Source of the DNA: Ruditapes philippinarum
Taxonomy: Eukaryota
Length of the DNA stretch: 64,000 nt
Assembly (NCBI RefSeq): GCF_026571515.1
Contig: NW_026866846.1
Coordinates: forward strand, 62,001 to 126,000
Reading direction: 5' to 3'
The position numbers and the translations under genes are program-made. Of the stretch, positions 3,340-60,953 are shown piece by piece (positions within the stretch are counted from its first letter, which is position 1; the number at the start of each line of letters is the position of its first letter). The notes under the pieces are model-generated. The model was not told the origin of the DNA. It searched no databases and saw only the letters and a program-made list of their open reading frames with translations.

Positions 3340-6300
3340 ATGATTTTGGGATTGTCATTTTACATATTCGTAAGTTTTGTAAAGGATTGTTTGATCCTGA
3401 TGTATAAATTAACATTTCTTACACGCATAAACATGAAAAACACTAGTCTAGGCTTAATTATGATTTAGTTGTGTTTAATTCTGAATATTTATTATTTGTA
3501 ACTGCAGATTTTCTAATTCATAAAGTCTTTAGTTATTTTTTCTTTCGTAATATTATGCAATATTTTACGGTCTGTTTGATTGAAATGTTTACATCAAATT
3601 GATTTTTGAAATGAAACGTTTAAATTAGATAAGCGGAATACTTTAATCGGAGAAATAATATGGCAAAAGTTTTCATTCGTTTGTTAAAAATGGATGGATC
3701 ATTGATGCCGCATTTGATAATAAGTTAATACTAATTTATTTTAGTTCGATTGTGTTGGAAGCTGTAAGCTAATTTAAACACTCTCAAAACCGGTCCTGGA
3801 ACAAACTAGTACGATGCAATGAGTGTAAATTGTCTTGCTCAAGGAAACAACGGCTTGCCGCTGACAGGGTTTGAACCTAAGCGGCTAGCAATCCTTAGAT
3901 TACTAGTCCGATGACTTAACCACTCCACCACATTTGACCATTTATAATGAGGTTAAATAAATGTTTAATATCATGGTGCCCGCTTCTTCTTCTTCTTCTT
4001 AGTTACGCATACATACAATGTCAGTCAAGTGAAAGCGCGTGAATTTCTGAATATTCTAACAAGCTATTTCACCTATATACTGATTTTTGACTAAGAAAAC
4101 ATTTGTTTGTGTTACTCACTAGTGTGAAAGGGTTCTGCACTTTATTCAATAAAACATATAAAATGTTAAAAAAGGAACTACTCAAAACCACCTCAACCTT
4201 CTTTTTATATCTGTTTTTGTCCCACGTATATCAAATAGTCACGTGATATTGGTACCGTGATATTGACATGTTTAGATGCATATTCAGTTAGAAAAGTCAA
4301 GCAGTTTTCAAGAAATGAAAATATAAATTACATGTATATGGACGTTCTTTTAGTTACTTTCAATAAATATTTCAAAAGTCGTAACCGAATTAATGTTTGT
4401 TTTGTAGCTCCTCATATGCCTGGGTATGGTTTGGATTGGTAATGCACATGTCTTACCCAAAGGTTTCCATCTAAGCAATTCATGTCAGGTAAGTTGTGTT
4501 CATAAACATATTAATAAAGTTATAATGTTGGAAATACCAAAGTTTTGTACAACTCGTCGATGATTTAGTAGCTTTAATGTAATAATTAAGGGATCATGCT
4601 TGAAACTAAAGTACCAATATATTTTCCTAATGTTTACTTACAAAGATGGGAATTGTTTCTTTTTTCACTTACACTTTATTATGATGCATACAATGAAGAG
4701 CAAATCTTTTAAAGCAAACAATTAAAATAAAATAAACAAAATGTTAAGAATATGTTTATAGTATAAAATATTACGGATATTCAAAATTTCTTGAAAATAT
4801 CAGACATGTTTGGTTTGGTTTTATGGCGCACCAGCACAATTTAGGTCATTTTGGGCCGAAACAGAAAAATTAAATTGGCTTACTAACTCGGGGGGTTACA
4901 AACTTTAGACAATGTCATGGGCCATATCCACCTCAGCTGCTGGAGCTAAAATGTGCATACACTTCAGTTGCCTCTTATGATTACGCAGGGTTAAACGATG
5001 GCTGCAACTCTAATGTATCAACCCGTGACAGTCAGCCACAACGGGCGTTAGGTATATCGGAGTATTGGAAAGGACATTGGGCAAAATATTCGCACTTGGT
5101 TCATAAGAAAAAGTAAAAAATTGGTTAAACCATTTCTCAAGTCCTTAGGAACTGACTTAAACAATTTTCTATCACAATGGAATGAAAATACCCGAATGAC
5201 GAATACCAACATTGAGATGAAGTACGAAATGACGGTAAACTGTTGGCATGTCAAAGTGTTGTGATGAGTTTATAACGTATTGGGAAGGAAATATCCATCA
5301 AAATTAAAACAATATTTGTCAAAAGTAATAAAAAGATGAAGCACAGAGTAACTTATACTAAAATATATTAAAAACTGAGAACAAAGATCAACAAGGCAAA
5401 TGCAACGTTCACAAAACGCCACCCGACAAAATCCAGCCACAACAGCAGGGCACCTAGAAGGCACCAAACTAAACCGATAGAGTACAAAAGGGCGGCGAAA
5501 AGAGGGGAGGGACATGTACTTAGTAAAATGATTAGAACTAAAAGGGGCCTAAAAGCTAACACTTTATATGACACCATATTGCAATAAGGGTGTATTGAAT
5601 TTTATTTATTGCATTCACAAATCTTGTGAATATATTTCTCTACATGAAGTTGGATTTATTTTGATAAGTCAGTAAGTCAAAAAGCAAGTCCATTATATAG
5701 GTTATGTTGTAAATATCATTGTCATATTTTTAAATGTCGAATCGTTTAAAATAACCTGTAAATTTATTCACCATTGATATGTTTCAGCCTCGTTGTCAGT
5801 CAGGAAAAACATGTGTTGTGTATAGGGGAAATGACGGCAATGCTCATGTAACATGTAAACGTAAGTAGTTTGGTTTAACACATTTACTTTAAAAAATATC
5901 TATACATAGAGAATAATAGGTTAGTGCCGTGGAGCAGAGCCAGATAAACTTTCTCCATCCACGGCACCAATCTATTATTCTATTTATCCTGTCACCGTTT
6001 TTTTTTTAAAGAATTTTATTAGGCAAACTACCTTTAATCACACTATCGGAAATGTTTCTATATAAAGAAAGAAGGCCCGAAGCGTGCATTATTCTACAAC
6101 AATGCACTCTCCGTTCTTATTATCTCCCTGTGTATTTTCACATTGAGGGCGCCATTTTGTTGAAAAATGTGATAAATAAAAGCAATTTTTTGTCGAATTT
6201 TGTTGTGAAAACTATCTAGAATGAAAGAAAATGGTCTAAGAAAATGAATTCGAACACCAAATTGACTATCTTTTATTCAGTCGTTGATTCTGTACAGACG

Positions 6301-8241
6301 TTTAAAGTATTGTTTACGTGACGTCACAATGTAGCGCCAAACAGCACGTGCAAAACAATCAAATCAAGTACGCTATTTTAATGTCGCAAACTAGTTAAGT
6401 TTTACATTTATTTCACTTTTAATAATTTTTATTTCGCTTGAAAAATTATAGAGTGAAATAAAATAAACAAACAAAGTTTTATCAACGTTTCCAAAATTCG
6501 TTATTCTACACACAGAAGATTTAACGACAGTTTTTTTCATACCACTGGAACGGCCTGTAAATCTTGAAAAGTAGTCCGGCAAAGAGGTGCTCATTCATGC
6601 ATACCACATGATCAAGTGCCGTAGATCAGTAAAAATATACGGCACCTTGTTATCGGGCCGAAATTGATACAAGTGACAGGATAATAAACATTTTATGTAG
6701 AAATAGTGGATGTGAAATTTATAACACATCTCATAATAAAAGCTAAACCTGTCCATTTTGTGTTTACTATATTTTAAAGTTTAAGTTCTACCTGCAAATA
6801 TTATAATAATCATAAATAAAAAAAACTTAAGCACGAATACAAATTTAATATACATTTATCATATTATCTTTTAATTACAAAAGAGACACATTCATGAAAA
6901 ATTTCCGAAACATGTTTCATCCAAACTTTTCTCTACGATAAAAGTAAAGAGAAACTGCCACAAATCAAATAAAACATTAATTTGTGAAGCAACCTATCCT
7001 TGATAAATTGGAAGAAATTTACCGGACATCGATATAACAGACGGACAAGAGCATTACCATAATACACCGACTGAGATAGAAACATCAGAAGATTTATTTG
7101 AATGTTTTAAGGCACGATAATAATATATAATCGGAGAATTGTAAATATCACGAATGTCACAAGGTGACTATGTTAACATCACTGGTGGAAATTAAAAGAT
7201 AAATCTGTTTATTTTAGGAATCGATCCCCATAAAGTCGTTTTAGATGGCACCTTCATAGTTTCTGCTCCAGCTCTAAACAGACCTTTAAACGATTTGACC
7301 TTAGTTAGTCAAAATACTGCTTATGAAAAGAACATCGTCGATTTCGGATCATTAATAAAACCATTACCAGACATTGGTGTAGAAACGGCTACTGCAAAAG
7401 ACGCCATCATATCCAATCCAGAAGGTTTACTGAATAGCATTACAACCTTCGCTGATTCCATAAGGCAAGATTTCAAAAACGAATTAGGATCTATTGATAA
7501 CAGACCTCAGCTATTTAACCCTGCTACCTTTGCTAAAAATGTAAACGATTTTCCTCTTTTCAAGAACCTTCCTTCACCAGAACATAACAAAGGTAACGAA
7601 AGAAAACGATCAAAATTTGAAGGTTTAACACTTGTAAGGAACGCCGACGGCGGTGTTGTTTTCCGACGCATCGGTGCTTCTCCACACCACCAATCATCAA
7701 GTCAAGGTCTGAATGTGGAAATTATATCTATTGAAAACAGAAATGTTTCAGACTCTTCAAATTTTGAAAAGGGTCATACTAGTCAAAAACCGATACCTCC
7801 ACAAACTCTTGAGAAGAAGAAATCAGCTGAACGTAAGTAATACATTATACTTTTAAATGGATCTTATGGATCTTACGCCGACATACATACTGTTATTCCC
7901 CAATAAGGAGAGATTTTGTATGTACAACAAATTCTTAACTGTTTGATATATTTCTTGTAGAACTTTTTTAATATAAATAACTTAATTGTTATTTTATTGC
8001 TAAACGTCTTTTCTTATTTACCACCAACTCATATCGCTTTACTATTTAATATATTTACCTATTTCTTTGTTAGGTGATTTTGAGGTTTCTTAATTTAATA
8101 ATACAAATTGTTACACAACTATTATTTTTAGATACAAATGCAACATGTACACCCTGCGTTCCGGATCAAAGATGCCCAGAAATGCAATATTGTTTTTATT
8201 CACCTACCTGCGCCAGACAAATATGTCAGCCATTGAATTAA
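3340..8241 (+). CDS. Cluster gene A: secreted Cys-module/low-complexity protein, ~302 aa
   Basis: Exons 3340-3369 (MILGLSFYIF), 4408-4488 (LLICLGMVWIGNAHVLPKGFHLSNSCQ), 5788-5860 (PRCQSGKTCVVYRGNDGNAHVTCK), 7218-7832 (contains ORF 7295-7840), 8132-8241 (TNATCTPCVPDQRCPEMQYCFYSPTCARQICQPLN*). All GT-AG, phases 0,0,1,1, 909 nt in frame. AATAAA at ~8317. Confidence 0.85.
3724..3935 (-). mobile_element. tRNA-derived SINE (in intron 1 of gene A)
   Basis: Reverse-complement homologue of 2751-2975, with gggtttgaacc (B-box rc), ttaaccactcc (A-box rc) and the core cttgctcaaggaaacaac. Confidence 0.75.
4807..5020 (-). mobile_element. SINE-like repeat with (AAAC)-type tail; second copy 58011-58220
   Basis: gtttggtttggttttatggcgcaccagcacaatttaggtcat...gttacaaactt...ggctgca aligns over ~200 bp with 58011-58220. 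Confidence 0.7.
5905..6690. mobile_element. Non-autonomous DNA element with terminal hairpin (Crypton-like architecture)
   Basis: Hairpin agaataataggttagtgccgtgga...tccacggcaccaatctattattct, followed by tttatcctgtcac, whose inverted copy gtgacaggataa lies at ~6673. Superfamily assignment is inference. Confidence 0.5.
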
Positions 8242-10087: not shown

Positions 10088-13000
10088 ATGAACAACTTTT
10101 GTTTCTACCGCCATATTGTGATAACACTGGTAGGTAATTTTACTTATTTTAGTTATAGAAAAAGTATGATAAAATATAATTGATATACTTGTCAATTATA
10201 AGATATAAACACATGATGTTGTTGTTTATGTTACTTGAGACATCAGAAATAGTATGGTGTAGGTCAATGATCTCCTCTGTTTATTGTTCCTACACAGAAG
10301 CAGATCTTTATCAAGAACTGATAATATATGTTTGACAACTATTGAATAAAGTAATCCACACGAATCTTGCTCCTTAGTCAGTGTGTGTTAATTTCCAAAC
10401 ATAACAAAAAAATTGAATAACAGAGGCAGAGGTATGTGATCCCTGTTCACTGTGATATCGGACCGAAACTGTTGCACGTCGATCTGCATTTCATCAAATC
10501 ATTTATTTCTTCAATAGGTTCTTTCAATAAGCTTACAGACAAATGCATATTTTTCTGTGCAACAGGCAATGATTTCATTGATAATGGCATACATAAAGTC
10601 CAATTTCATTTGCTTTTAATCTACTTTTAAATTGCATGCATTTGTTATCGATTGCATGCATATTTTATTTATTTATTCATTTATTAAATTTTTCTTTCTT
10701 CAGATCATTTTTCAAGAAATGGTGGTCTTGTCCCTTTCTCACCGGGTTGGAACGTTTCAACTACACCGGAATATATGTAACGTGAGTCTGATTTAAAACT
10801 AAACAATATCTGCAAAGGTGTAGGCTAAGTAAGACGTTATACAAATCAGCATTTGTTTACATAAAAATGTCCTTTTAAAATCAAATTAAAATTATGTCAA
10901 TAAATTTACATGGGAGAGCAACATCCACGAAACAAAACATGTTACTTATAACATCAATACCCATACATAAATATACGTGTTACAAGTAACTGCCTTTTAT
11001 TTGTGAAAGTGAACAATTATCTAATAAGAGAGAGGAAACATGTTAAAAGATATCTTTTTGCTTATGCCAAACAGAGTTGTAGACCTGTTATGCGGCATTG
11101 TCTTTTAACATCTTATATTTGATAAAGTTACACAATATGATTAATTTGTTTTTTTCAATTGAAGTGTCTTTGTTTTATATTTGATAGACTATTATGGTCT
11201 TTTAGACTTGACTTATTGTGTAGGCAACAACAATGTTAACTTAACAATAAATGATTAAGCGTTTTTAAGCTTTGTGTTTTGTTTCTATATTTGGTTTGAT
11301 GAATACGTTCTTTGTTTTTATGGCTTTTTTGTTGTTGGTTTACATGTCCAGCAATAAAATATTCATAAATAGAAATAAACATACATGTATGCGGTTAGAT
11401 AATTGATTGCTTTTACTTTTTGTAATAATTGCATATATATTAAGCTAATTGTTTTGAAAACAATAATTTTGATTCCCGTCTTTACATTACCTTAAATAAG
11501 ACATATCAGAATTGTTTTTGATACAATCGACACATTTAAAAAAATGGTAGTATATGTATAAGAAAAAAATGTTTATAATTTTTTATTTAATTGATACGGT
11601 AAGAAAAGTAATTGGTAACATATTTATATTTCTTTTACAGAGAAGATGTGGAGGGTATCTTGCATGCATTGTTAGGGGAATAGAACAAAGGTGTGATCGT
11701 AAGTACCAATTAGGCGATACAAAAACAACAATTGTTGGAAATCTGATTGCATTGTAAACAACATGGAAAGCCATCTGTTTGTAGTTCTTTAAGTGTATAA
11801 AACTATAAATCTACTGCCTGTAGTTTACAAATATCAAAACACATGATTAACAAAGTAGGGCGGCGTTCAATGAACACAAGTCCCCCCCCCCCCAACTCAG
11901 GACCTGCGGCAAGGAGCCCAGTAGAATACCAAACAGGACAGGGCACACGGGCAAAATTTTGTTAGAAATTTAAGAAAGAATGATTTCAAAATATCTATAT
12001 AAAATAAATATGTTTGAGTATTTCTTAAAAATGTATAACACTATTTCAGATGAAATAGTTTTATAGAATTTAAAAACGATAAAATTATGCAAAAAAGATC
12101 CGAAACAAAATATAATTCTGCTATTTTGAATAGGTTTTTTAACTGTTGAAAAATGATTTTGTGCGTGCGTGATTCTCTCAAAAGGATATATACCAACAAA
12201 TTTCTTGAATGTAGGAATTTTGGAATTATTCTTTCTTAAATTTCTAACAAAATTTTGTAATTACAAGCAGCATATTTATAGTTTCATACACTTAATATCA
12301 AATATATCAAAACTTTAATAAAATGCAAGCAGCAAGGATATAGCTTTTTACACTTTAAGAACAAAAAGTGATAAATGGTGAAAACCATAGTAAAATAATC
12401 AAACGTCATGCTTTGCTCCCTTTTACCGCGCAATATTCATTAGTAAATAAATATCAGATACTTTCTTTGTTACAACTCTTACAAGAATTAATATCAATTA
12501 GTTATAGAAAACAGATATATCTCATGTTTCAGCTCTTTCAAGAATTAATATTAATTATTTATAATGTTCAGATACGTGCTTTGTTAAAACTCTGGCAAGA
12601 ATCACAAATTATGTTAGGTAGTCGATAGATTACATAATTTTTTTGAAAATCTTGAAAATGATATAGCTTAAAACAATTTGAAAAAGATGAAAAACAACAT
12701 TATATTGTTTTAGATATAGCCAATGCAGAAAACCTAGCATCACATGAAAACACATTTGTAATAACGAGACGAAATAATCTAGGATTTGTTTATCCAAACG
12801 AAATGCTTTCGGATAGGCAATTATCGGCTAACAATCATGTTATAGTACCTCAACCACTCGACTTATCAGGTTCGCAGCCAACTACAGTATTGAACCATGA
12901 ACAACAAACTGATGTTATAACAAGACACAGATCGGAACAAGATCTACACAATAGCCGAATTGGACAAGGTACTAGTTGAAATGATAGTAAATAACTTGAA

Positions 13001-13796
13001 AAAACTGTTGTGTTCTAGTCAAAAAAGTATAATTAAAACATCTCATTTGATAATAGTAACTAGAAGCACTTTGTATGTTAAAATTAATTCCAATGAAATA
13101 CCTTTGAATTTATCGGCCTACTTCTTAATTAAACTGTAATTATTCTGTAATCTTTTATCCTGTTATACCATGACCATATATATGTTCTAAACAGACTCAG
13201 CGTTGGTTGAAATGGTTGAAATGTTCAGATACGAAAATTCTAGCGATCAGAAATTATCGGCGTAAACCAGTTAATAACTTTCATTTTTGTGTTTCGTATA
13301 ATTTCTTTTCATATGTTTATTTCTCAGCAATAGCCCACACTCTTCTGCATAAAATTGGTAGAAATAGACAGGTGCCATTATCACAAAACAGTAGAAATAT
13401 TACGTCATTTGGACGGCGAGATTCTAAAATAAAACTAACAGACGATAAACAAGGGAACCAACCGACTGTCAATAGTGAACGAACAACGCCACCGGCCATA
13501 AATTCAAACGCAGCGCAAGGTAAAACATTCATATTTTCATATACATTTTGCTGCGACTATTTTCCTTTTCATACTCACTGCAAATTATAAGTAAAATTTG
13601 ACTGCAAGGAAACACTAGAAATTTTATCTCAGAAATATTATTATTTTCTGTTTTCTAATAATCCGTTGTTAAATATAAACTCTTTCCAGATAAAAGTGCC
13701 ACCTGTACAGTATGTGACAGCAATTCAGATTGCACGGACGGCAATTACTGTTACTACTCTGCAACATGTGCCAGGCGAACATGTCAACCTCTCTGA
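10088..13796 (+). CDS. Cluster gene B: secreted Cys-module/low-complexity protein, ~243 aa
   Basis: Exons 10088-10129 (MNNFCFYRHIVITL), 10704-10781 (IIFQEMVVLSLSHRVGTFQLHRNICN), 11641-11698 (RRCGGYLACIVRGIEQRCD), 12714-12968, 13328-13519, 13690-13796 (KSATCTVCDSNSDCTDGNYCYYSATCARRTCQPL*). Phases 0,0,1,1,1, 732 nt in frame. AATAAA at ~13886. Exon 1 choice is the least certain. Confidence 0.8.
11789..12295. mobile_element. Palindromic MITE bounded by TTAA (Kolobok/piggyBac-type target), with an internal insertion at ~11835-11950
   Basis: Left ttaagtgtataaaactataaat pairs with right atttatagtttcatacacttaa. Inner arms aaaattttgttagaaatttaagaaagaat / attctttcttaaatttctaacaaaatttt. Confidence 0.65.
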
Positions 13797-18588: not shown

Positions 18589-21500
18589 ATGGATTCACAA
18601 AATTATATCATTAACATATTCTCTTTGGTAGGTAAATTATTTTATGTTTGATTTTGTTGTAACTTTATTATCACGTGTATTTTAAAGATTGAGTAAAGTT
18701 AAGGTATTTGAAGTATTGATAAGGTTTACTTCATTTTATTCAGTGTAATTTACATCTGCGGTTTTTTATTGAAAAGAAAAACCAAAGCATTTACATTTCA
18801 GCCTTGATGCATGGCGATAAGTTTTTCTTACACTACTGAAATTAAGGGATCAATTGCAGAAGTGGATTGAATAATTGAATTTTTATCATTTGATTTTGGC
18901 AGTTGGTTTAATAAAAAGGAATAAAATATCTGGTTAAAATGTCACTTGAAATATTTTAATATACATTCTATATATATATTATTTGTAATGATTCAAGTTA
19001 AAATTCGAGAAAGAGTGTCTTTAATTTCTTTTCAATATGTTTTCGGACTTTCCATACTATTTTTGCAGAATTTATTTATCCGATTGGGAAAGAGAACTGT
19101 CATATATCCTTAATATCATATGATAAATAAAAAATACTATCCTCTGTTTATTTCAGATATTATGCATATTCCCAAATATATTGTACACACAGCGTATAAC
19201 ATGCCCGGTAAGTAACCGATGTATCTATATTTACTCTTAAATAATTATAATACTGCATGTTTCATTGAATAACCGTGACGTTTATATAGTGTTTAATATA
19301 CACGGCTGTTGTCGATTCATGAAGAAATCTTTTTTCTCTAAAAATGACGCTTGCTGTATTATTAATTCGTTATAAAGATCGTTGACAGGTTATATGGCCG
19401 AACATAAACGGCTGTTTGCAATATAACCATAGAAAGCTGTTTATAAAGGGCCATATAACCTGTCAACGATCTTTATAACTAATAATATACACGGCTGTTG
19501 TCAATTTTTGAAGAAATCTCTTTTTCTCTCTCTAAAAATCAAAGTTTGCTTAATTATAAATTCGTTATAAAGATTCTTGACAGGTTATATGACCGCATAT
19601 AAACGTTATTTGCAATATAACCTTCGCATAGCGGCTGTAACATAACTAACTATACAAGACTGATTGATTAAAACGACCCAAATTTCTCATTAAAACTTTA
19701 AAGGGAATACTACAGTAACATGTTGTACAGTAAGACATGCAGACATAATAAAGACAGTTTGGTAGAATTCTATTTAATACTTTGCATTACCTTAGATAGT
19801 GATAACAGAAACATTGCCAGCGAAAAGTACAGTATTTGTTCCCCAAAATGCATCAAGTGCATTAGAAAAATTCAGTTATTCTATAACAATCAATAATGTT
19901 TGTCAATTTTAATATTCTTCAGCGTCTTGTTTAGATATATTTAGTATTTCCAATACTTCTTGTATGACGATGAGAATTTTGAAATACACATTTTTATCGA
20001 ATTCTGGAGAGGTGTTCTGTTCAATGTGACCTAGAAAAATGTAATATGGCCAATAATTTTAACTCTTGACTTGTATTATTCCTCTCAGTTTGAAAATTAA
20101 ACAATAACAAATATACTAAATCATGATAGCTAAACGCACACCGATCGTTTACACAGGGACCGTACACTGCTTTAACTAGAGTAACACGAACGATTCACCT
20201 TGAAAGCTACAAAGTTGACAGTTCAAATTGTGTCTATTTTGAAATAATTTTGCTTTTATGAGATCAAAGTATTTTGTGACTGAACTTTTTCAGACACCAT
20301 GTGACATCGGCTACACATGTGCAATGGTTAGACATGGGACACAACCTTCAGCGCCTGGTTGTATATGTAAGTGCCAGCTCTTATTGACGTCATGTTTAAA
20401 ATAATAGCAACATCCATACATTCGATATTTTATATTTTATACATTCAATCAATCGTTAAGAAATACAGATACAATTAACTGATCTTATATTAGGATATTT
20501 AAAACATCTACAGGAACTCTTACGTTAAAAATTAAATCGAAATTTTTAAGATATTAAAAAATTTCCAATTACATTTATGAAAATAAGGTTGAGAATTGAT
20601 TTGTATAGGCTTTTTATATATTAACAGCAATGCAGGAGGCAATTCTACTGCACCAAGCAATAAATGGTGGTCCCAGTGGTCCAGGATCTGGTATAAATAA
20701 TCAAGTTGGTGTTGGTATCCAACAGCAAACCCCGGGCTTTCCACAGGCACCACGACCAGGAGACCCAATTCCACCTTTTCCACAAGGAGCTGGAGGGACT
20801 ATCCCAGGCATGAATTTTCTTGGTAGTACTGATCCAAGGGAACCGGGTTTTGAACAAAGATTTGCACTAGGTTTAGGTGGACAACAACGCAACTTTGGAT
20901 TTGGACCCCCTGGTCAAGTAAATGGACAATTCGGACGACCACAGGTACCAACAGGGATGTCTGGACCAGCTTTTCTTGATCCAACTGCAGGCCAGTTTGC
21001 AGGTCAAGCTCCTGGTCAATTCCTTGGACCTTCCGGTGGACAGTTTGGTCCAAATGCTGGTCAATTTGGACCAAACGCTGGTCAGTTTGGTCCAAACGCT
21101 GGTCAATTCGGTCCAAATCCCGGTCAGTTTGGTGGGCCACCCCCGGGTCAGTTTGGTCCAAGTGCAGGTCAGTTTGGCCCTGGAGGGCCAATGGGATTCA
21201 ATCCCCAAGTTGACGGTGGGCAAAATATTTCTTCCTCTGCATCTGGTATTAGAGATAACACTAACATAGCTTGGCATGACTTTAGCCGTGGTGGTGGTAG
21301 TTTCCCAAGACCCGGTCTATCTGATAATCGTGCAGGTTCTTTTCAGCAAATAACTGATGCAGTCGATCAAACCCCTATTCGGATCGGTCAGTTAGGCCAA
21401 TTACCTCGTAATTTCGTTGAACGACCAGGTACATTTGGTACACGCCAAGGTCGTTTTGGGTTGCAGCCAAGGACCGACACATTCGATCCGAATTCTAACC

Positions 21501-24500
21501 AGTTTGGCGCTGCTGGAATAGAAATTCCATCAGTAGGATTTAATCCACAAGTGGTTGATCTAAGTATTGCTCCAACTCCATCTGTTCCTCACAACAGAGA
21601 TATGAATAACCAAATAAGTAATGATTTTTCACACGTTAGTCATGAGGGTAGTCATTCACAATTTGACAGGTCTAGACAATCCACCGGAGGGTTTGGTTCA
21701 ATGTCGAGTGTTCCCGATCAAACTGCTGGCCAGTTTGATCCACAACCACATGTAGACGGTGACAAAAGTCATATATCGCATGGAAGTGACAACAATTTTC
21801 CTCAAAGAAACAGTAGATTTCAAGGTGAGCAGTTTCACACTGACTTTGTTCCACACACTGACCCAAGACCCCCTGTCCAAGAAAACGTACAAGACATACC
21901 TGATGGTTTTGTAGGACAAGATTCGCAACAAACTAATTTTGAAACATTTGTTAATACCCCTCCAATATTGACTTTACCTGAACAAGGTTTACTGAACCGT
22001 GCCGGTTCAGCTAATCAAATTCCTTTGGGTACACGTGTGGGTTCTACAGAACCACAATCAAATATAAATAATGCTCCAATGTTAGTAAAATTAGACGGTG
22101 TAAAGACAGCTTCTGTGGGAGAACATTCTGTTGAACAAAGTAAAGTTTCTTCCATTAAAGAAGATTCTGCTGGGTTACACTATGTGTTTTATCCGCAGAT
22201 TAATGGTGCAGGGTTTAGAGTTAACATTACGAAGGACGGATTTTGTCCACGTGATTCAATGACACGCGATAGGAGCACGTGCATGAATAGCTGCTATTCT
22301 GATGAGAAGTGTCCACTTGAACAAAAATGCTGTCCAAGTGGATGTTCTCTTAGATGTCGAAAACCTAATTTAGCAGTTCAGGACCTTAATTCACGTCAAC
22401 AAGACGCCGAATTTAGCAATATTTCAGGTAAGTTTTTAACAAATATGTAAATTTAACATTTTTTTGCAATATCTGTCTTTTTACATTTAAAAGTTCGAAA
22501 AGGGTTAGATAAGATGAACAATTTATCAAAACAATGGACACTTTTCACGTTTACGTTCCAAACATACAAAATAATATGCACTTAACATACTGTTAACATC
22601 TTGCGTATTCAAATATTCATGTTTTAGATTTCTTTTTAATTTTAAATCTTTTATTTGTTTCAGAAGTAAAACATAAAAAAGAAAATTTGTAAGACATACT
22701 CGTATATACAATCAGATAAAAGAAATGTTAAAAACACGCTGCAGTTAGGATGAATTACAACTCGGAGTAAAAAGAGTCCCGCCAACAAAATTCATTGAAC
22801 CAGTATCTCTAACGGTCTTCATTATGTCACTTTATTACAAACCTTAGGAACATTATCAATCATATTTTAAGTTTCATCATTAAGACATTTATGTAGTTAC
22901 TATATATTTCTTTTTCATCCTTTTTGCTATCATTATCTTTGTTTTCAATTTTAACAAGTTCACCTTGTTCAATGATGTTAAGCTGTCAATTTTAAGCGTA
23001 GAAGCGCCTCTGTAAACAATACTTACATATATTTAAATGCAGAATGGAAACATAATTAGATTTCCCTTCATATAAGAAAATACTAATGCTTTTGTCATTT
23101 CGTGTTACACATCAGCAGAAGAATAAATTTAAGGAATCATCAATAAATAATAGAAATATACATAAGCTAAACATAATTACAAAATGATTTATCATTGTAA
23201 TACAAGTTTAAAAGTACTTCAGTCATAACTATTGTCTGGAAAAAGTGCTGAACTATAATGTTATAAGTAATATAGACGTACTGACGGTAGTTTGGTCTCG
23301 TTTGTACTTTTATCTTCATAAATAATAATGTTTCACATGAAATTGTATGTAAGGTCAACAGGTCAAAAAGTTTATTCTTGTAGGTAACAGCATACAAAAA
23401 TAATGGTATAAATCATCATTAATGACAATCGCCACTACATACTGATTTACGTATAAAATAACAATTGGGAAAATGTGTGTTTTATGGTCTATTTTTTGCT
23501 AAAATTCAGTTTAATTGTTAACGCGTTCATTTATGCCCACTTTCGTATAATAATTATAATAATACTTATACAAGCATTTGCAATGGCGTTTCATAACAAT
23601 TGGTATAAATTTCAGAACAAAGTCCACTTATTCTGGTAAGCCACAATGACAAAACATCGTTGTTTTGTTCATCAATGAATGTATCTTTCTTTACCGTTCA
23701 AAATGGCCCGCAATCTTTATATCCTTTAAATATTTACTGGTGTTTTATTGCATGAAGTCACACTTAACTTACCATACATAGGAAATTTACCGTAATAAGC
23801 ATGTTAGAATCGTGTCTAAATCAACCTTTTCAAAACATCTTCATCACAACAATTACTCTTGTTTGCTCCAGTATGCTTGTGTATAATCCTTTCCGTAATA
23901 AAATTTAAATTGCATGATTCTATTTCCTGTTGAAAACAGCAATAATTCCCCCATAGTTTTAGTTGATGCATGATCTCATTTTTAAATGACCAATAATAAA
24001 GTAGTAAAATTAATCTTTTAAATATCGCCACATGTAGCACTTAACAATAAAATAATAATTCATCATTTTCTATATTAAATATACATTGTATTACAAGCTA
24101 TATTTTATTTTTCATTGTTTTTATTTCTTACAAAGAATTATATACCAAATTCTGCCAAAAACATTTTTACCATACGTTTTGTAAATCATAGTAATACAAA
24201 GTGCTTCATTTATTGCACATTTATTCTAAATTCCTATTTCTATATAATTTACTATATAATGCAAAAACATTATCTAAAACATTTTACATTTAACATGATA
24301 ATTACGTTGAACAGTTATTTTTTGTCATTTGGTTAAACTACATTGTTTTCTTATTATTTCCTCTTTCACTATGTTTCATAATTATGTTTTCCCCATATTT
24401 ACAGCCGTAGAAGCAATGTGTCGACCTTGTAACTCTCACATGGATTGCAATTCACAGGATCAATTTTGTACGACAAGTGCTTATTGTGGACAAACCATGG

Positions 24501-24526
24501 TTTGTAGGCAGGTGGCTCGGAGATAA
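18589..24526 (+). CDS. Cluster gene C: large secreted Gly/Gln/Pro/Phe-rich protein with WAP domain and N- and C-terminal Cys modules, ~694 aa
   Basis: Exons 18589-18627 (MDSQNYIINIFSL), 19157-19207 (ILCIFPNILYTQRITCP), 20294-20366 (TPCDIGYTCAMVRHGTQPSAPGCI), 20628-22427 (1800 nt, ORF 20630-22450), 24405-24526 (VEAMCRPCNSHMDCNSQDQFCTTSAYCGQTMVCRQVARR*). Phases 0,0,1,1, 2085 nt in frame. Confidence 0.9.
19250..19640. mobile_element. Hairpin-type non-autonomous DNA element (second copy 33225-33510, opposite orientation)
   Basis: Palindrome gttataaagatcgttgacaggttatatggcc...ggccatataacctgtcaacgatctttataac, shared with 33232-33367. Confidence 0.7.
20990..21181 (+). repeat. Coding tandem repeat GQFGP(N/S)A, ~21-24 bp unit, ~9 units
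   Basis: GQFAGQAP GQFLGPSG GQFGPNA GQFGPNA GQFGPNA GQFGPNP GQFGGPPP GQFGPSA GQFGP, with synonymous variation between units. Confidence 0.9.
22232..22366 (+). other. WAP (four-disulfide core) domain within gene C exon 4
   Basis: KDGFCPRDSMTRDRSTCMNSCYSDEKCPLEQKCCPSGCSLRCRKP has the KxGxCP start, CxxxCxxDxxCPxxxKCCxxGCxxxC and 8 Cys. Confidence 0.9.
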
Positions 24527-45955: not shown

Positions 45956-46035
45956 TAAATGTATGTTTATCAACTTATATTGAATGATATATACTTTGTA
46001 TGTACTTGTCAAGTCATTAGTTTAATATGTTCAAA

Positions 46036-49000
46036 ATGGATACGGAAAAATCGAAAATGGTCATTTATTTTTTGGTAAGAAATGTTTACTTTATTGCAAC
46101 AAAACTTTGAATGCGGATTTAAACATTATGCTATCGAATAAAACAACCTGACAGTCTTATTAATTCCTTAAAATAATTTATATAATCGTGTTAGATAGTC
46201 GTGCAGACAAGCAGTTTCATGGTCATAAAGTATTGGTTGCTTGCTAATTTATCCATTATCATTAAAGTTTTGACCTTAAAACATGTCAAAAATAATACTT
46301 ACTTAATGTAAAATTTTGTTCATTCTGTTTTCATATGGATATTATTTTGCAATAATCAGATTCAGTTCTACATGCAAAAAATACATTGTAATCTTTAAAA
46401 AATATAAAATAACTAAAAGTAAATGTTAAAATTACCTTAAAACCTCTCTCTCTGTTGTTTAATTTGTATGACCTGCTTAGTCTTATATTGTACATTATTT
46501 CTTTAAAGTTGCTGGTCATATGTATTAGCCATACAGTTGATGCTATCCCCTGTCCGGTAAGTATTTACTTAGTCATTTCAAAGAAACTAGTAATACAATA
46601 CATTATATGGATAAATAATAGTGCTCAATTTCTCAATTACTTACTTTTTAAGTCGAGCATTTTTATTCAAAATTTGTGTTTGATATATTTAGTGGTTGAA
46701 AAAAAATATATTGTCAAATTTAAGCGTTCTTTTTTCAAATTCTTGGAAACATTTACTCAACAACAACTTATCATTTGATATTATATGATATTATCAGCGT
46801 ATCATGCTGTGTAAAATTTCAAAACATAATTTCAGCCACAAAGCTGTTTTGTCTTTGTACAATCAACATTGTTCCCAATACATCTGTCGCGCAAGTGCGT
46901 CTCGACGGAAAGATGAATTTTATTAATGCTTACTTTACCCTATGTAAGAGTGACACATGTTTCATATAAGCTTAAAGATTTCTGCTCAATCGTGGATGCA
47001 ATTGGTAATTTGATTAGTAAATATTGAAGAAAAAGAGTGTCGAGAGTGATACATTCTGTGCATGCCGGAAGAAATAGTAAATTGAATTATTATATCAAGA
47101 TCTTAATTTTCAACTCCTATAAGACTTTATTTCCTACATTTACTTTTATTGGATTATAAGGTTATGATTAATTGATTTTTTATGTAAAAAGTTGGTTAAT
47201 ATTTAAAATATGAATAAAAAAGAACCACAAGGGATTCCGTTAACGAAACGCCCAAATAGACTGCAACCGAGAAGGGCAGCTAAAATAATACTCCTTCTAC
47301 AGGCTTATACTCAAATGTTACATAGAACAACTAAACATAAGAGAGAACATTTTAAGTTACGTAAGTCCATTTTCATTGAGTTAGTACTTAAATATTTACA
47401 GAATTGGTATAGATACCGGGTATGTCACGGTCGCTCTTGTACTGTTGTAAGGCATGGTTTTGGTCGTGCAAGGTACGATTGTCTATGTAAGTAACACCGT
47501 TTATGATTTATTTTTTTACACACATTCTACTGATATAATTCCACGCAATCATGTACTTTGATTTATGACTGTCTATTATGTAATTTTCTACAAAGACCGA
47601 AATGAACCATCTCCTCCTAAATACGTAAAAAGGCCCTTTGAACTTATTTTTTTTTTTCATAGTTAACTTTTCAACAGAATTTAATCGATTTTATATTAAA
47701 TTTAATATATTATCATTTAACGAATTACATGTTTTGGTAAAATGTATTTAGTAAGTAAAGTCAGGATTGACAATTTGATAATTATCGCATTTTTGCATTA
47801 GGTACAGGATTCCTATTTTGAAGTACATTTTGACTCCATATGACTTTTTTTTATTTTTTCGGCTCTTCCCTGTATTTTTACACTTTTATATGTATATTGT
47901 GTAAATGACTTTTACTTCTGTTTTACCTTTAGTCCGATAAGATTATAACTATAAGCTACTAAAAAGATCAGTTAGACAATAACTACTATATTAAAGATTT
48001 ATTGTTCTTCTAAATAGCCGCACAGGAGGCTGAATTATTACAAAGAGCTCTTAGTGGAGGTGCCACAGGTCCAGGTACAGGATTAGGAGAATCTCTACAC
48101 GGACGGTCAAGATTATTAGATCTGTCAGAACGCTTACAACTTCATATCAATATCAACAATGACAACAACAATCAAATTAATCAAGCCGATTCAGGAAATG
48201 TTGCAGTCAGCCAAGTGAACGCAGAATGTGAGTTAATGTTAAGAGCACCTATATTCTATAAGAATATAACAATAAGAAATAAATATTTGAAAATTAAAAT
48301 AGAAAGGAAAAGAGGAATTTGATAAAGTTTATATGATGTTCACTGTAGGTGATCGTGATGTCCAGTAAAGCTCAGAATCTGAAAAATTATTTCATAAATG
48401 TATGATAAAATGTCTTCTCTTGAAAAAGCATATACATGTATAGGGTGAGTTAGTAATATATAAAAGCTATAAAATAGTGTCATAATGAAAGACTAGTTAT
48501 ATGTTGTCTATTTTTTTCTTTTAATTTCGTCAAGATAAATGCAAAATGTTGATTTCTTAAACAGTGCAGAATAATTATATTTTATAAACTTTCTAAAACT
48601 AATGTTTTTACGAATTTCTTGAGTGTTACTGTCTGCATTGAATTCAATCGTAACATGCCAATACTATTTGAACTGCGTCACGACAAAACCAACATAGTGC
48701 GTTTGCGACCAGCATGGATCCAGAACAGCCTGTCCATCCGCGCAGTCTGATCAGCATCCATGCTGTTCGCTTACCAGCCCTATTACAAAAAAGAGAAACT
48801 GATAGCGACAGCTTGGATCCTGATCAGACTGCGCGGATGCACAGGGTGGTCTGGATCCATGCTGGTTGCAAACGCACTATGTTGGTTTTGTCATGGCGCG
48901 GCTCATTTTGTTTATTGCAGTGTCACCAGATCAGTGTCAAGCATGTCCAAATGGAATATGTCCGGGACAACAACATTGTGTTTTTACTTCCTCCTGCCCA

Positions 49001-49036
49001 GGAATGGAAATGTCGTGTCGGTCAATTACTGGTTGA
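46036..49036 (+). CDS. Cluster gene G: paralogue of F with intact N-terminal Cys module, ~165 aa
   Basis: Exons 46036-46074 (MDTEKSKMVIYFL), 46509-46556 (LLVICISHTVDAIPCP), 47402-47486 (NWYRYRVCHGRSCTVVRHGFGRARYDCL), 48018-48227 (AQEAELLQRALSGGATGPG...SGNVAVSQVNAE), 48921-49036 (SPDQCQACPNGICPGQQHCVFTSSCPGMEMSCRSITG*). Phases 0,0,1,1, 498 nt in frame. Confidence 0.9.
48669..48905. mobile_element. Palindromic MITE in the last intron of gene G
   Basis: ~100-bp inverted arms: gacaaaaccaacatagtgcgtttgcgaccagcatggatccag...catccgcgcagtctgatcag / ctgatcagactgcgcggatg...ctggatccatgctggttgcaaacgcactatgttggttttgtc. Confidence 0.9.
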
Positions 49037-54503: not shown

Positions 54504-54567
54504 AGATGTTCAATTGACACTTTGGCTAAACATACATTTAGTACTGCCTTTGCAAAGGATTGCAATA

Positions 54568-56515
54568 ATGGGTGCTTTAAAATCACTTGCTTGCTGCTGT
54601 CTGTGTCTGGTAAGTATTTCATCCTTTTTTATATTGAAAGTTTTTTCATAATGATTAGCATTAATAATATAACATTTCTATCGCTTGTGTAAACTTTTCT
54701 TTCGGCTGTTGGGATATACATGCAATACTCTTTTTAACATTCTTACGCAAAGCACTTATGTTAACAACATGATGTGAACGATATTTAACTTTTCATTGAC
54801 TAACAGCCTATTAATCTTTAATGTTTAGTGATAGTTATATAAGTATGAATAATGTTGTCTTTAACTACATCTAGAGCTAATCATTGTTTTTGTTATTTTC
54901 CAGGTGGTTTGCTTTTTGCCAGATTTTACAGTTGCCCAATACCTTTCATCAGGTAGGTTACTTACATGATGTGAAAACTAAACTATGTTTAGATAACTGA
55001 ACGATTAAGATTAATTATAATTAAGAGTGACCTTTTGCAGACATGTTAATAAATTTAAATTTAATCTATAATTCACTTACAAACTTTATAATAGAGTCAA
55101 ATCGTATGTCAATAAAGATTAACAATGGGGCACAACATACACGCAATGAAGTCCCCTCAATTTACTGTAGCATAAGGTTCTCATTGAGGTCGCGCAATTG
55201 GAACACAACAAGCTATAGATAATGAATTATACTTTGATTAAATCATGCTAGGGGAGTTCACTAACGTTTTTTTTATTCATCTGTTAGGATAGTAAAATAA
55301 ACGAAAGTCCTGTATAAGACAAACAAACATCTATAAGAAACAAAGAAAAGTATATTTTGTCTTACAGCATTTGGAGCGATGCGAGGAGGAGTCATGTACC
55401 CTGGATATCCTGGATATCCATCACCAGCAATATACCCACCAGCCGACATGTATCCATCAGGAGTCATATATCCCGGTATGGACATGTATGACCCTTATCT
55501 TGAACGAGGACGACCAATTATAGGCGGGGATCTTATCCATCGTCCTGCCGTTGTAAGCGATAGGTCAGACAGAACTGTAGAACACATAAATATATCCAAC
55601 AACAACCAAAATATTCGTGAAGAAGTTGGTTCCGGAAACGTTGTCGTAAATCAAGGTAAGGTAGACAAAGACAGTATTTTTGCTGGCGTTTTTATAAAGT
55701 AATACTTATGGCGATTGGGTTGTTTTGTGTGTGTATGTTTTTTTTAATACATGTATAAGAAATATCCGTATAATACTGAATGGTTAAATATAGCATTCGT
55801 AGCGTTTTTATCGTTTGTGGCAGTGTATTAGCCATTCACATTCTGTTTTATAAGAAACACTATGTTATCTAGCCAAAATAGTCAAAGTATTTTATCTCAT
55901 AGATTTACTTATTTCTTTTACTTAAAGGTCCGTTATGCCTCAGAAATACATGTACTACCAATTTTATTTCTCAAAAACTTTCAATTGTTGGTTATATTGT
56001 TATAGTTTCAAAATAAAACTCATTTGCCGTATACATGGACTATCTTTTGCAACTATAGCTCTGTTGGCCATTGGACTAATTATAATTAATTAGTATTTTG
56101 TTTTGAAGTCAAAATACTATTTTGTTTACATTTTGCTACCTTTGTTGCACACAACTGTATGTTCAACATTACATTCTTTAATTGTGTAACATCGAATAAG
56201 TTCTAAATCCATTATTAATAAACTATATAACTCCTGTTTGGCATTTCTAAAGAATTGAAAAATATTGATTTTTGAGACATTATATGCCTTTAATGATAAG
56301 TTTTAAAAGAAATACATAGTTGAGCAATTGAAATTCATTCATGGTAGAAATTTATACCAAAAATTTTCTTATTTTTAGTTACATCAAATAATGCAATGTG
56401 TAATTGCCAAATTGGTAGATTTGATCAGTGTCCGTATCCTGAACGATGTGTTAGTGAGGGAACATGTACAGGAGGAAGTGGAATTTGCCGGAACCCTGGA
56501 TTGTTTATGATATAG
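54568..56515 (+). CDS. Cluster gene H: secreted Tyr/Pro/Met/Gly-rich protein with Asn-rich motif and CxC-type 6-Cys module, ~171 aa
   Basis: Exons 54568-54609 (MGALKSLACCCLCL), 54904-54952 (VVCFLPDFTVAQYLSS), 55368-55655 (FGAMRGGVMYPGYPGYP...GSGNVVVNQ), 56379-56515 (TSNNAMCNCQIGRFDQCPYPERCVSEGTCTGGSGICRNPGLFMI*). Phases 0,1,1, 516 nt in frame. Confidence 0.9.
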
Positions 56516-59281: not shown

Positions 59282-60953
59282 ATGGATATTATCAAATATT
59301 TCGGCTGTTTTGTTTGTTTGGTTAGTATACTTATTGATTTCCATACACATTTAATGCTACAACTTAACTTCTCCTTCAAAAATATTCTACATTTAATAAA
59401 GGCATCTGTTCAAAGTCTCTGTAACAGTAAAATATAGATATATGTTACGTTATCAGAAGCTTTTTTATAATAATTTATTCTATTCACTTATTCACTTTTA
59501 ACTGTGCGTATATTATGTGCCTTTTGCAAAAATATTGAATTTGTAAAGCATAGGTGTGGGATGTTGCTAAACAGACAAATTATCAGAATCTACAATTTTC
59601 GTTTTTATGCTGCCTAAGAACTCCGTTTTTTACAAATATTTCTGTGATTAACTCAGTTATTGTATGTGCATAAAGAAATTCAGTAAGTTTAAATATAATT
59701 TTTATACAGGCACTGTTCTATGGTCCAAATTTCTCGGAAGCACAACACATGATGGGAGACCCGTGTAAGTTTCTTTTTGATTTTATTTCATATTGTCGTT
59801 TAGATTATTATAAAAAATAAAGATACTGTAACACTGAATTCATAAAGTAGTAGTTATTAGAACACAGCTAAACAGATTATTTTATACGTAAAAATTATAT
59901 TTGATAATGTCAAAATTTCAATCATAAACATGGTATTCTGTTTAAACGCTATGGTCTCTTTGTTGACATTCATACAGAAAGTAAAACAAACAATTTTGTA
60001 AATGGTTTATATCTGTATCTGATTTTTCTTTACAGTTTATCCCCGTAGAGGAGGGTTTCGAAGAGGAATGTATCCTAGAATTCCGCCGATAAGGCCGTAC
60101 CCCCGAAGAATAATATATCCTGATACAGGCATTTATGAACCATCAATCCTCCCAGTAGTTCGACGTCCAGCTGTTGTTAGTGACAGATCCGATGCTCGCA
60201 GACAGAATATAAATATAAGCAATAATAACGAAAATATTCGAGAAAACCATGGTTCTGGTAACGTCAACGTAAATCAGGGTAAGTAATTTATATAAGACTC
60301 ATAATAACATCTTAGCACTGATGACCTTCTCCTATTACCTTAAATACTAAATGTAAGAAACATGCGTGTTTCGTGCGGGAATATCAATATAGCGAGCCAA
60401 CAATATGTGCTGCCATCAGCTAAAAAGGCTTATCGGGCAAAAATATGAGTACGCTCAGTTTCTGCCAGCTACATAGGCTAAGGAAATGACTCTTGTCTTT
60501 TGTAATTAGCATGTACTCAGTTAAGACTATTTGAACTGTAATGATTATCATATTTTTTCCAGACTGATATCACTTTAACACACATCTTGTAAGTATGAAA
60601 TAAAACCAGATAGGTTTGTCAGTATTTTTGAAATGATCATTACAGTTATAATATTATTATAAGATAAAATGTTAAAGATTTGTTTCTATGATAAAGTTAC
60701 TTGTACCTTGTTAAGTTGTTTTTAAATAGCTTTGTACTAGATTCCATTAATGCATACACACTTATAAACAAACAATATCATTTCAGTAACAAACTCCAGA
60801 ACGAGAAGATGTGACTGTCACGCAGATCCGTTTATGCAGCAATGTGGACCATATCAACGATGTGTTCGAGACAGTACTTGTACCGGAGGAGCAGGTAACG
60901 GCGTGTGTCAAGACGCTGGTTTTGGTGGGGGCCATGGCGGAATGATGATTTAA
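59282..60953 (+). CDS. Cluster gene I: paralogue of H, Arg/Pro/Tyr-rich, ~167 aa
   Basis: Exons 59282-59320 (MDIIKYFGCFVCL), 59710-59764 (ALFYGPNFSEAQHMMGDP), 60036-60278 (YPRRGGFRRGMYPRIPP...GSGNVNVNQ), 60787-60953 (TNSRTRRCDCHADPFMQQCGPYQRCVRDSTCTGGAGNGVCQDAGFGGGHGGMMI*). Phases 0,1,1, 504 nt in frame. AATAAA at ~60978. Confidence 0.9.

What the first reader, a model, noticed from the sequence alone, without database searches (positions are those of the whole stretch)
3340..60953. Tandem cluster of ~9-10 modular secreted proteins built from a shared exon toolkit, largely invisible in the ORF track
Seen: eight complete models and two partial units, all + strand and head to tail. In all eight complete genes the signal peptide is split by a phase-0 intron after a 10-14-codon first exon (ending TTG/CTG|GT in 7 of 8). 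Each gene takes a different subset of shared modules: N-terminal 4-Cys (A,B,C,D,E,G), ExxLLxxAxxG (C,E,F,G), Asn-rich SGNVxVxQ (E,F,G,H,I), C-terminal 6-Cys (all but E). Between these sits an unalignable low-complexity segment with gene-specific chemistry (GQFGP; Y/R/G then H/P; Y/P/M; R/P/Y; S/N/R). Module use shifts progressively along the array. Established: secreted low-complexity proteins with Cys modules and WAP domains typify molluscan shell-matrix and adhesive secretomes, and phase 1-1 exons favour exon shuffling. Inference: a lineage-specific combinatorial system in which conserved disulfide modules and an assembly motif carry interchangeable disordered payloads, probably a co-expressed extracellular material (shell matrix, periostracum, ligament, byssus/mucus) or defence family. 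I do not recognise it as a named family.
Basis: partly seen in the sequence, partly recalled or inferred. Interest (0 to 1): 0.92.

Follow-up and report, generated by a model that had tools for sequence, protein, structure and literature searches.

The report
Clam-specific tandem family of secreted proteins
A 112-kb head-to-tail array of about 13 related genes in the Manila clam encodes small secreted proteins with disulfide-rich ends, a conserved asparagine-rich motif and very different low-complexity middles; the hard clam has it too, no named family matches, and the function is still only inferred.

Summary
The window is Ruditapes philippinarum DNA. It carries eight intron-containing genes (A, B, C, E, F, G, H, I), all on the + strand. 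Each has a signal peptide split by a phase-0 intron and a different subset of four shared modules.

Genome-wide, three tested modules (N4C, Asn-rich SGNV, C6) occur only on this contig. The array runs about 50 kb past the window, with five more H/I-type genes.

Corrections:
- ExxLL, the low-complexity core and SGNV share one exon, so the pattern fits tandem duplication with module loss better than free exon shuffling.
- Gene F stays in frame only through a 40-nt Cys-less relic of the N4C exon.
- RefSeq already models C, G and H as "uncharacterized"; my spliced G and H models match those proteins exactly.

Pfam finds only the WAP domain in gene C. The C6 model has no significant PDB match. No paper names these genes.

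A structural extracellular matrix role is the best-fitting inference, but no expression data could be obtained. The same scan has other first-reader notes on this window (s1-806830, s1-806860) and on the downstream continuation (s1-810682).

The parts
3340..8241 (+). Gene A. Exons 3340-3369, 4408-4488, 5788-5860 (N4C), 7218-7832 (N/S/P-rich core), 8132-8241 (C6). 302 aa.
   Evidence: Open spliced model with AG/GT boundaries, intron phases 0,0,1,1. No RefSeq protein was found in the searchable length range.
10088..13796 (+). Gene B (tentative model). Exons 10088-10129, 10704-10781, 11641-11698 (short N4C), 13328-13519, 13690-13796 (C6). The ORF 12662-12976 may be a further exon.
   Evidence: N4C HMM E=5.5e-5 and C6 E=1.3e-12.
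18589..24526 (+). Gene C (LOC132733981), long form. Exons 18589-18627, 19157-19207, 20294-20366 (N4C), 20628-22427 (ExxLL, GQFGP repeats, His/Ser/Asp zone, WAP), 24405-24526 (C6a). An internal alternative donor lies at 21824.
   Evidence: P0001 and P0002 are 94-99% identical. Splice sites read. Mercenaria isoform X1 (P0003) has the same WAP+C6 end.
22232..22366 (+). WAP four-disulfide-core domain inside the large exon of gene C.
   Evidence: PF00095, E=9.9e-9, 35.8 bits against a cut-off of 20.8.
26798..26919 (+). Alternative terminal exon of gene C (C6b), joined from donor 21824. This is RefSeq isoform X3.
   Evidence: P0002 maps here at 97.6% identity. The phase-1 junction reads RFQ|GSNV.
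28072..29953 (+). A phase 1-1 exon holds a whole N4C module (28072-28164), followed by exon 29349-29953 (S/N/R-rich core plus C6). It is used as an alternative 3' cassette of gene C (isoform X2).
   Evidence: P0001 maps here at 97-99% identity. Mercenaria isoform P0004 has the same architecture. Only one weak candidate for an own first exon was found (27408-27465).
34741..37462 (+). Gene E. Exons 34741-34776, 35661-35702, 36127-36205 (N4C), 36729-37462 (ExxLL, Y/R/G core, SGNV, H/P region, 16-aa repeats, stop). No C6.
   Evidence: The Mercenaria orthologue LOC123553993 (P0024) has the same architecture and also lacks C6.
40020..42693 (+). Gene F. Exons 40020-40058, 40539-40586, 41144-41183 (40-nt Cys-less relic of the N4C exon, weak donor GTATTT), 41803-42006 (ExxLL+SGNV), 42575-42693 (C6).
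   Evidence: The frame is open only when the relic exon is included. No spliced protein was found for F.
46027..49036 (+). Gene G (LOC132733988). Exons 46027-46074, 46509-46556, 47402-47486 (N4C), 48018-48227 (ExxLL+SGNV), 48921-49036 (C6).
   Evidence: The spliced model is identical to XP_060576671.1 (P0015).
54568..56515 (+). Gene H (LOC132733972). Exons 54568-54609, 54904-54952, 55368-55655 (Y/P/M core plus SGNV), 56379-56515 (C6 variant).
   Evidence: The spliced model is identical to XP_060576652.1 (P0010).
59282..60953 (+). Gene I. Exons 59282-59320, 59402-59420, 60036-60278 (R/P/Y core plus SGNV), 60787-60953 (C6 variant with a Gly-rich tail ending MMI).
   Evidence: The fragment P0011 covers the core exon.
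37034..37153 (+). Example of the 40-aa Asn-rich module (consensus RRPxVVxDxSxxxxxxINVSNNNxNxxxxxGSGNVxVNQ). Other copies in the window: 41874-41993, 48095-48214, 55535-55654, 60158-60277.
   Evidence: Alignment A2. Whole-genome search finds 10 copies, all on this contig. Library search finds it in Ruditapes, Mercenaria and unnamed transcript assemblies only.

Best explanation
Shown. This is an old tandem gene family confined to one locus of the Ruditapes philippinarum genome. The window holds 8 genes and about 50 kb downstream holds 5 more, roughly 112 kb in all. An orthologous set of uncharacterized genes lies on one Mercenaria chromosome.

Every product starts with a hydrophobic signal-peptide-like N-terminus encoded across a phase-0 intron. 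Up to four conserved pieces follow in a fixed order:
1. a 4-Cys N-terminal module (N4C);
2. a short helix, ExxLLxxAxxGG;
3. a gene-specific low-complexity core, predicted to be disordered in the one protein modelled (gene G);
4. a 40-residue Asn-rich motif, usually carrying an N-x-S/T sequon, followed by a C-terminal 6-Cys mini-domain (C6).

Module content changes stepwise along the array. A-B have N4C and C6. C has N4C, ExxLL, WAP and C6. E has N4C, ExxLL and SGNV. F-G have (N4C), ExxLL, SGNV and C6. H-N have SGNV and C6. Gene C further swaps its C-terminal end by choosing among three alternative 3' cassettes.

Inferred. The proteins are secreted. Their small disulfide-locked ends and the Asn-rich motif act as common handling or assembly pieces. 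The divergent cores (G/Q/F/P, Y/R/G, Y/P/M, R/P/Y/G) supply the material chemistry of a venerid-specific extracellular matrix: shell organic matrix, periostracum, ligament or byssus. The family arose by serial tandem duplication with divergence and module loss, plus one capture of a neighbouring unit as an alternative 3' end.
For: Locus restriction: whole-genome six-frame searches place C6, SGNV and N4C only on contig C15333.

Extent of the array.

Gene models:
- RefSeq proteins for C, G and H match my exon joins.
- Spliced transcript-derived proteins from other species show the same module order: P0006, P0023, P0025.

Conservation: orthologues with consecutive LOC numbers lie on one Mercenaria chromosome. 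Best-score pairs are C-C, E-LOC123553993 and H/I-LOC123553996/7.

Secretion signal: the N-termini are hydrophobic, with a maximum Kyte-Doolittle 10-residue mean of 2.3-3.3.

Fold:
- Six Cys are invariant in 13 C6 copies, and the AF2 model of C6 has pLDDT 76.
- In the full-length gene G model, only the signal helix, the ExxLL helix and C6 are confident. The rest scores under 55.

Composition: the cores differ strongly in composition and pI, from 5.2 to 9.5.

Background: lineage-restricted secreted proteins with repetitive low-complexity domains are typical of mollusc mantle secretomes, for example shematrins and KRMPs (PMC5400390).

Age: there is almost no DNA-level similarity between units in the window except F/G, which fits old duplications.
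Against: - No expression or proteomic evidence was obtained, so tissue and material are unknown.
- A, B, E, F and I have no spliced protein in the searches made. F depends on a weak donor.
- The self-association test of SGNV+C6 gave no answer.
- SGNV and N4C are not confidently folded.
- Several cores (I to N) are cationic and Pro/Arg/Tyr-rich, which suits antimicrobial peptides as well as matrix proteins.
- WAP domains occur in both immune and shell proteins.
Confidence: 0.55

Rival explanations
1. Host-defence family. The products are precursors of secreted antimicrobial or mucosal-defence peptides. The cationic Pro/Arg/Tyr-rich core is released at the conserved [R]RP site that opens the Asn-rich module. 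The Asn-rich/C6 part acts as a pro-region or a second effector. The WAP domain in gene C acts as an antimicrobial or protease-inhibitor domain.
For: - Cores of I and J-N are strongly basic and Pro/Arg/Tyr-rich: I has pI 9.5 and 13% Arg, and the sequences are shown.
- R-R-P or R-P is nearly invariant at the start of the module.
- The C6 profile's best but non-significant matches are knottins and a plant AMP.
- WAP is present.
- Small secreted products in tandem arrays are typical of bivalve AMP families (my own knowledge).
Against: - H is acidic (pI 5.2) and Y/P/M-rich. C is a protein of about 500 to 700 aa, depending on isoform, and G/Q/F/P-rich. A is not low-complexity.
- Pairwise best-score matches to Mercenaria suggest slow turnover rather than the fast gain and loss usual for AMPs.
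- No match to any known AMP family.
Confidence: 0.2
2. Another secreted role unrelated to hard or adhesive materials. Candidates include mucus or feeding-structure proteins (gill, labial palp, crystalline style), egg-coat or gamete-recognition proteins, or peptide-hormone-like precursors.
For: The same features argue only for secretion: signal peptide, small disulfide modules, N-glycosylation sequons and low-complexity cores. Nothing here fixes the tissue.
Against: Tyr/Pro/Gly/Met- and Gly/Gln/Phe/Pro-rich cores are more typical of cross-linked structural proteins (inference from composition). No mucin-like Ser/Thr/Pro repeats or hormone-like dibasic arrays were seen.
Confidence: 0.15
3. The modules are independently mobile exons and each gene was assembled combinatorially by exon shuffling.
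For: - Core exons and the 'D' N4C exon are phase 1-1.
- 'D' places a second N4C module downstream in gene C, a true cassette capture conserved in Mercenaria.
Against: - ExxLL, the core and SGNV share one exon.
- In A, B, C, E and G the N4C module is split over two exons with phase 0 then 1, so it is not a symmetric cassette.
- Module order is invariant and module content changes as a gradient along the array.
- F retains a decayed N4C exon in place.
Confidence: 0.12
4. Chance ORFs or dead gene relics, not a functional family.
For: Most exons are short and the DNA is AT-rich.
Against: - HMM hits are separated from background by 4 to 12 orders of magnitude in E-value, depending on the module, and all lie on one strand.
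- Frames stay open across all joins.
- The Cys are invariant.
- Orthologues and spliced transcripts exist in other species.
Confidence: 0.03

Closest known systems
Lineage-specific mollusc mantle-secretome proteins with repetitive low-complexity domains, such as the pearl-oyster shematrins and KRMPs (PMC5400390)
   Same: Secreted, taxonomically restricted multi-copy families. Short conserved, partly Cys-bearing ends flank fast-diverging Gly/Tyr/Pro-rich low-complexity cores.
   Different: No sequence relationship. This family has its own modules (N4C, ExxLL helix, 40-aa Asn-rich motif, C6). It occurs in venerid clams, and mantle expression or presence in shell has not been shown.
WAP four-disulfide-core proteins (PF00095), for example shell or immune WAP proteins of molluscs
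   Same: Gene C carries one bona fide WAP domain.
   Different: Only one isoform class of one gene has WAP, so it is an accessory domain and not the family signature.
Small disulfide-rich mini-domains (knottin / EGF-like / follistatin-N type)
   Same: C6 has about 35 residues, six invariant Cys and two short beta-hairpins in the AF2 model.
   Different: No significant match: Foldseek best E=1.6, VIA Z<=2.2, PDB profile E>=0.015. The disulfide connectivity is unknown.
Linear Pro/Arg-rich antimicrobial peptide precursors of bivalves (such as myticalins; recalled from memory)
   Same: Signal peptide, then a cationic P/R/Y-rich stretch, then a basic site and a non-cationic C-terminal part, as in genes I to N.
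   Different: Other members are acidic or large. All carry conserved Cys modules that those precursors lack. No sequence similarity was tested or found.

Membership tests
WAP (PF00095) | Eight-Cys four-disulfide core scoring above the Pfam gathering threshold | tested here: met
   Gene C large exon: 35.8 bits against 20.8, residues 542-586 of the ORF, i.e. window 22232-22366. Mercenaria orthologue P0003: 38 bits. No other gene in the array has it.
Any Pfam family, for the N4C, ExxLL, SGNV and C6 modules | Significant hmmscan match | tested here: not met
   No family at E<=1 apart from chance-level hits (SinI restriction endonuclease, DUF4384, Kazal_C7), for exon translations and for ten full-length proteins.
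Knottin / EGF-like small disulfide-rich folds (for C6) | Structural match of the six-Cys core to solved members | tested here: inconclusive
   The AF2 model has pLDDT 76. Best Foldseek E=1.6 (EGF-like, follistatin), best VIA Z=2.2 (spider knottins), best PDB profile E=0.015 (cyclic knottin).
Mollusc shell-matrix / biomaterial RLCD proteins | Secretion signal plus a low-complexity core | tested here: met
   Hydrophobic N-termini and biased cores. AF2 shows a disordered middle.
Mollusc shell-matrix / biomaterial RLCD proteins | Expression in the secreting epithelium and physical presence in the material | not testable with these tools
The LOC ids are absent from papers and from two Mercenaria omics supplements.
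Cationic Pro/Arg-rich AMP precursors | A cationic mature peptide in all members | tested here: not met
   Approximate mature pI ranges from 5.2 (H) and 5.9-6.5 (C, F, G) to 9.2-9.5 (B, E, I).
Cationic Pro/Arg-rich AMP precursors | Antimicrobial activity or immune-induced expression | not testable with these tools
   Needs bench assays or RNA-seq.

The most novel reading that the evidence does not exclude
The 40-residue Asn-rich motif and the C6 mini-domain together form a previously undescribed docking or self-assembly unit, for example an Asn-ladder/cross-beta or glycan-bearing unit. It would target a set of chemically different disordered payloads into one venerid-specific extracellular material. 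Gene C would switch its docking end by choosing among 3' cassettes, making this a genetically encoded, single-locus 'materials kit' conserved since before the Ruditapes-Mercenaria split.
Probability: 0.2. Interest if true: 0.7.

Novelty: new variant of a known kind. Interest (0 to 1): 0.5.

Why it matters
If these proteins build a clam biomaterial, the locus gives a compact natural experiment. The conserved end modules stay the same while the disordered chemistries differ (G/Q/F/P, Y/P/M, R/P/Y/G), all at one locus shared by two commercially important clams. That would help explain how heterodont bivalves, which are much less studied than pearl oysters and mussels, make shell, periostracum, ligament or byssus. 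It would also supply new small disulfide modules and an Asn-rich motif for protein-material design. If instead the family is a defence family, it would add a new class of bivalve effector precursors. In either case it shows that several genes here (A, B, E, F, I) may be missing from current annotation.

Tried and rejected
- Joined sequences. Joined (spliced) models were not sent to any search or folding tool, so there was no signal-peptide predictor run and no database search with joined sequences. I worked exon by exon by reference and used RefSeq or Logan proteins returned by the tools. Joins were translated only inside local scripts.
- Homologue searches with the gene E and gene A core exons returned only unspliced JGI fragments.
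- The ESM Atlas gave no usable lead for gene G.
- Foldseek, VIA and the PDB profile search on C6 found nothing significant.
- Complex prediction on two copies of SGNV+C6 (gene G residues 88-168) returned 'no answer'. This is not evidence either way.
- Literature. No paper holds the LOC ids. Two Mercenaria omics supplements lack them. Motif strings gave only chance hits. General shell-proteome searches gave nothing specific.
- I looked for cryptic SGNV copies in A-D and for N4C or ExxLL in H-N and found none.
- I looked for an own signal exon for 'D' and found only one weak candidate, 27408-27465.
- Rejected: chance ORFs; membership of any Pfam family other than WAP; free exon shuffling as the main generator.
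Full report
**Source and overall picture.** The window is AT-rich animal DNA (about 30% GC). A search with the 1.8-kb open exon at 20609-22447 returned two Ruditapes philippinarum RefSeq proteins at 94-99% identity (LOC132733981 isoforms X2 and X3) and Mercenaria mercenaria relatives. The genome search places the window at contig C15333:62001-126000 of a 1.41-Gb assembly.

**Checking the observation: modules.**
- C-terminal six-Cys modules are at 8146, 13704, 24419, 26827, 29855, 42589, 48935, 56399 and 60810.
- N-terminal Cys modules are at 5788, 11641, 20294, 28072, 36127 and 47402.
- ExxLLxxAxxGG is at 20636, 36743, 41811 and 48026.
- SGNVxVxQ is at 37130, 41970, 48191, 55631 and 60254.

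Profile HMMs built from alignments A2, A3 and A4 and run over 134 kb separate true copies from noise by many orders of magnitude. SGNV gives 10 hits at E<=3e-13, then 0.34. C6 gives 14 hits at E<=2e-7, then 0.046. N4C gives 6 hits at E<=6e-5, then 0.22. Six Cys are invariant across 13 C6 copies.

**Checking the observation: gene models.** I rebuilt the models from splice sites and frames.
- Each of the eight genes (A, B, C, E, F, G, H, I) begins with a 10-14-codon first exon ending in GT at phase 0. Seven of the eight end in TTG or CTG, exactly as reported.
- A second exon completes a hydrophobic leader.
- Later introns are phase 1.
- All joined frames are open.
- The joined G and H models are identical to RefSeq XP_060576671.1 and XP_060576652.1, which came back independently from the library search.

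**Corrections to the anatomy.**
1. Isoform X2 joins the same donor to 28072 and then 29349. The full exon (donor 22427, with WAP) joins 24405, as in Mercenaria isoform X1. Mercenaria has the same X1 and X2 architectures (P0003, P0004), so the arrangement is old. This agrees with the scan's separate note s1-806830. Only one weak candidate for an own first exon of 'D' exists.
2. ExxLL, the low-complexity core and SGNV lie on one phase 1-1 exon. In A, B, C, E and G the N4C module is split between the end of exon 2 (first Cys) and a phase 0-to-1 exon. The modules are therefore not one-exon cassettes.
3. Gene F keeps, in the position of G's N4C exon, a 40-nt relic (41144-41183, 'AWYRYRDVYIDLA') without Cys. 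This relic preserves the 0-to-1 phase, and without it F is out of frame.
4. The array is larger than the window. Whole-genome searches find C6, SGNV and N4C only on this contig. Five further H/I-type units (J to N) lie at contig positions 132.6-176.9 kb. That gives about 13 genes over about 112 kb, with nothing related in the 20 kb upstream.

**Relatives.** A profile of the 40-residue Asn-rich module was searched against 1.84 billion representative proteins. It found 19 proteins at E<=1e-3.
- The named ones are R. philippinarum LOC132733972 and LOC132733988, and M. mercenaria LOC123553993, LOC123553996, LOC123553997, LOC123553999 and LOC123555334. All are 'uncharacterized'.
- The Mercenaria genes all lie on one 88-Mb chromosome with near-consecutive LOC numbers.
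- The remaining hits are unnamed records: fragments and proteins from Logan, ENA and JGI assemblies. They include the spliced proteins P0023 and P0025, with P0006 coming. The 597-aa P0019 looks like a chance low-complexity match.

Local scoring pairs C with Mercenaria C, E with LOC123553993 and H/I with LOC123553996/7. DNA self-comparison shows almost no nucleotide similarity between units in the window except F/G at 79%, whereas J, K and L are younger copies. The family's diversification therefore largely predates the Ruditapes-Mercenaria split.

**Comparison with known families.**
- Pfam finds only WAP in gene C and its orthologue.
- The C6 alignment folds into a small two-hairpin domain (pLDDT 76). 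It has no significant match: Foldseek best E=1.6, VIA Z<=2.2, PDB profile E>=0.015.
- In a full-length model of gene G, only the signal helix, the ExxLL helix (residues 62-73) and C6 are confident. N4C and the Asn-rich module score low.
- The ESM Atlas gave no lead.
- No paper contains the LOC ids, and two Mercenaria omics supplements lack them.

**How it most likely works.**

*Shown.* A single-locus, venerid-restricted family encodes products with signal-peptide-like leaders, conserved Cys-bearing ends, a conserved Asn-rich motif usually containing an N-[IV]-[ST] sequon, and cores that differ sharply in composition and charge (pI 5.2 to 9.5). Gene C uses alternative 3' ends.

*Inferred.* The proteins are secreted. 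The disulfide modules and the Asn-rich motif are common handling or assembly elements. The cores give material-specific chemistry in an extracellular matrix. This matches the well-documented pattern of lineage-specific secreted proteins with repetitive low-complexity domains in mollusc mantle secretomes (PMC5400390).

*Origin.* The stepwise change of module content along the array, the fixed module order and F's relic exon point to serial tandem duplication with divergence and loss, plus one capture event ('D').

*Rivals.* The main rival is a defence role. Cores of I to N are cationic and Pro/Arg/Tyr-rich and are followed by a conserved [R]RP. However, H, C, F and G are not cationic, and the members pair with Mercenaria orthologues. 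A self-association test gave no answer. The function therefore remains an inference.

Only exon references and proteins returned by the tools were used, so no signal-peptide predictor or exact look-up was run on my joined A, B, E, F and I models.

**Verdict.**
- The finding is real and well described.
- Its interpretation is partly right: it is a lineage-specific secreted modular family with no named family.
- It is over-stated on exon shuffling and on being invisible to annotation, since RefSeq models C, G and H.
- It is a new family within a known kind of mollusc gene family.
- Interest is moderate, and would be higher if tissue or proteome data tie it to one material.

Noticed in passing
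window 18481-18489, 39909-39917, 45934-45942 (also 24651-24659): The exact CRE-like 9-mer TTGACGTAA lies on the + strand 93-111 nt upstream of the start codons of genes C, F and G. A fourth copy lies just after the C6a exon of gene C. H has a one-mismatch copy 154 nt upstream. With one mismatch allowed, the motif is not enriched overall (32 observed, 22.8 expected). It may be a shared promoter element.
   Followed up: partly
window 30530-31837: A 62-bp satellite of 21 copies with 93% matches, in the intergenic space between the gene C cassettes and gene E.
   Followed up: partly
window 37297-37450: A 48-bp (16-aa, VAGHGNQGIPLGFxxP) coding repeat of 3.2 copies at the 3' end of gene E. The JGI fragment P0007 carries more copies, so copy number seems polymorphic.
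   Followed up: partly
L003-L008 (contig C15333:132591-176937, beyond the window): Five more H/I-type genes (J-N) with G/Y/R/P/D-rich cores, the Asn-rich module and C6 variants with Gly/Met-rich tails. J, K and L are recent duplicates at 77-89% DNA identity. This is the region of the scan's note s1-810682.
   Followed up: partly
window 64800 onward (L003:800-1733): A 283-bp head-to-tail array (99% between copies), with related inverted copies at window 41-333 and 38238-38507. This matches the scan's note s1-810734.
   Followed up: no
window 50600-54300; L003:1727-3058; L004:2062-6028: GC-richer stretches with long ORFs that look like retroelement remnants sit between array members. The L003 and L004 ORFs look reverse-transcriptase-like by eye. 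None was run against Pfam.
   Followed up: no
window 56500-56512, 60939-60950; L007:343-369: H-type products and their Mercenaria orthologues end in a short hydrophobic tail ([MF][MFI]I) after a Gly-rich stretch (GLFMI, GGMMI, GIMMI, GGMFI, EHFI). This is a conserved C-terminal feature of unknown meaning.
   Followed up: no
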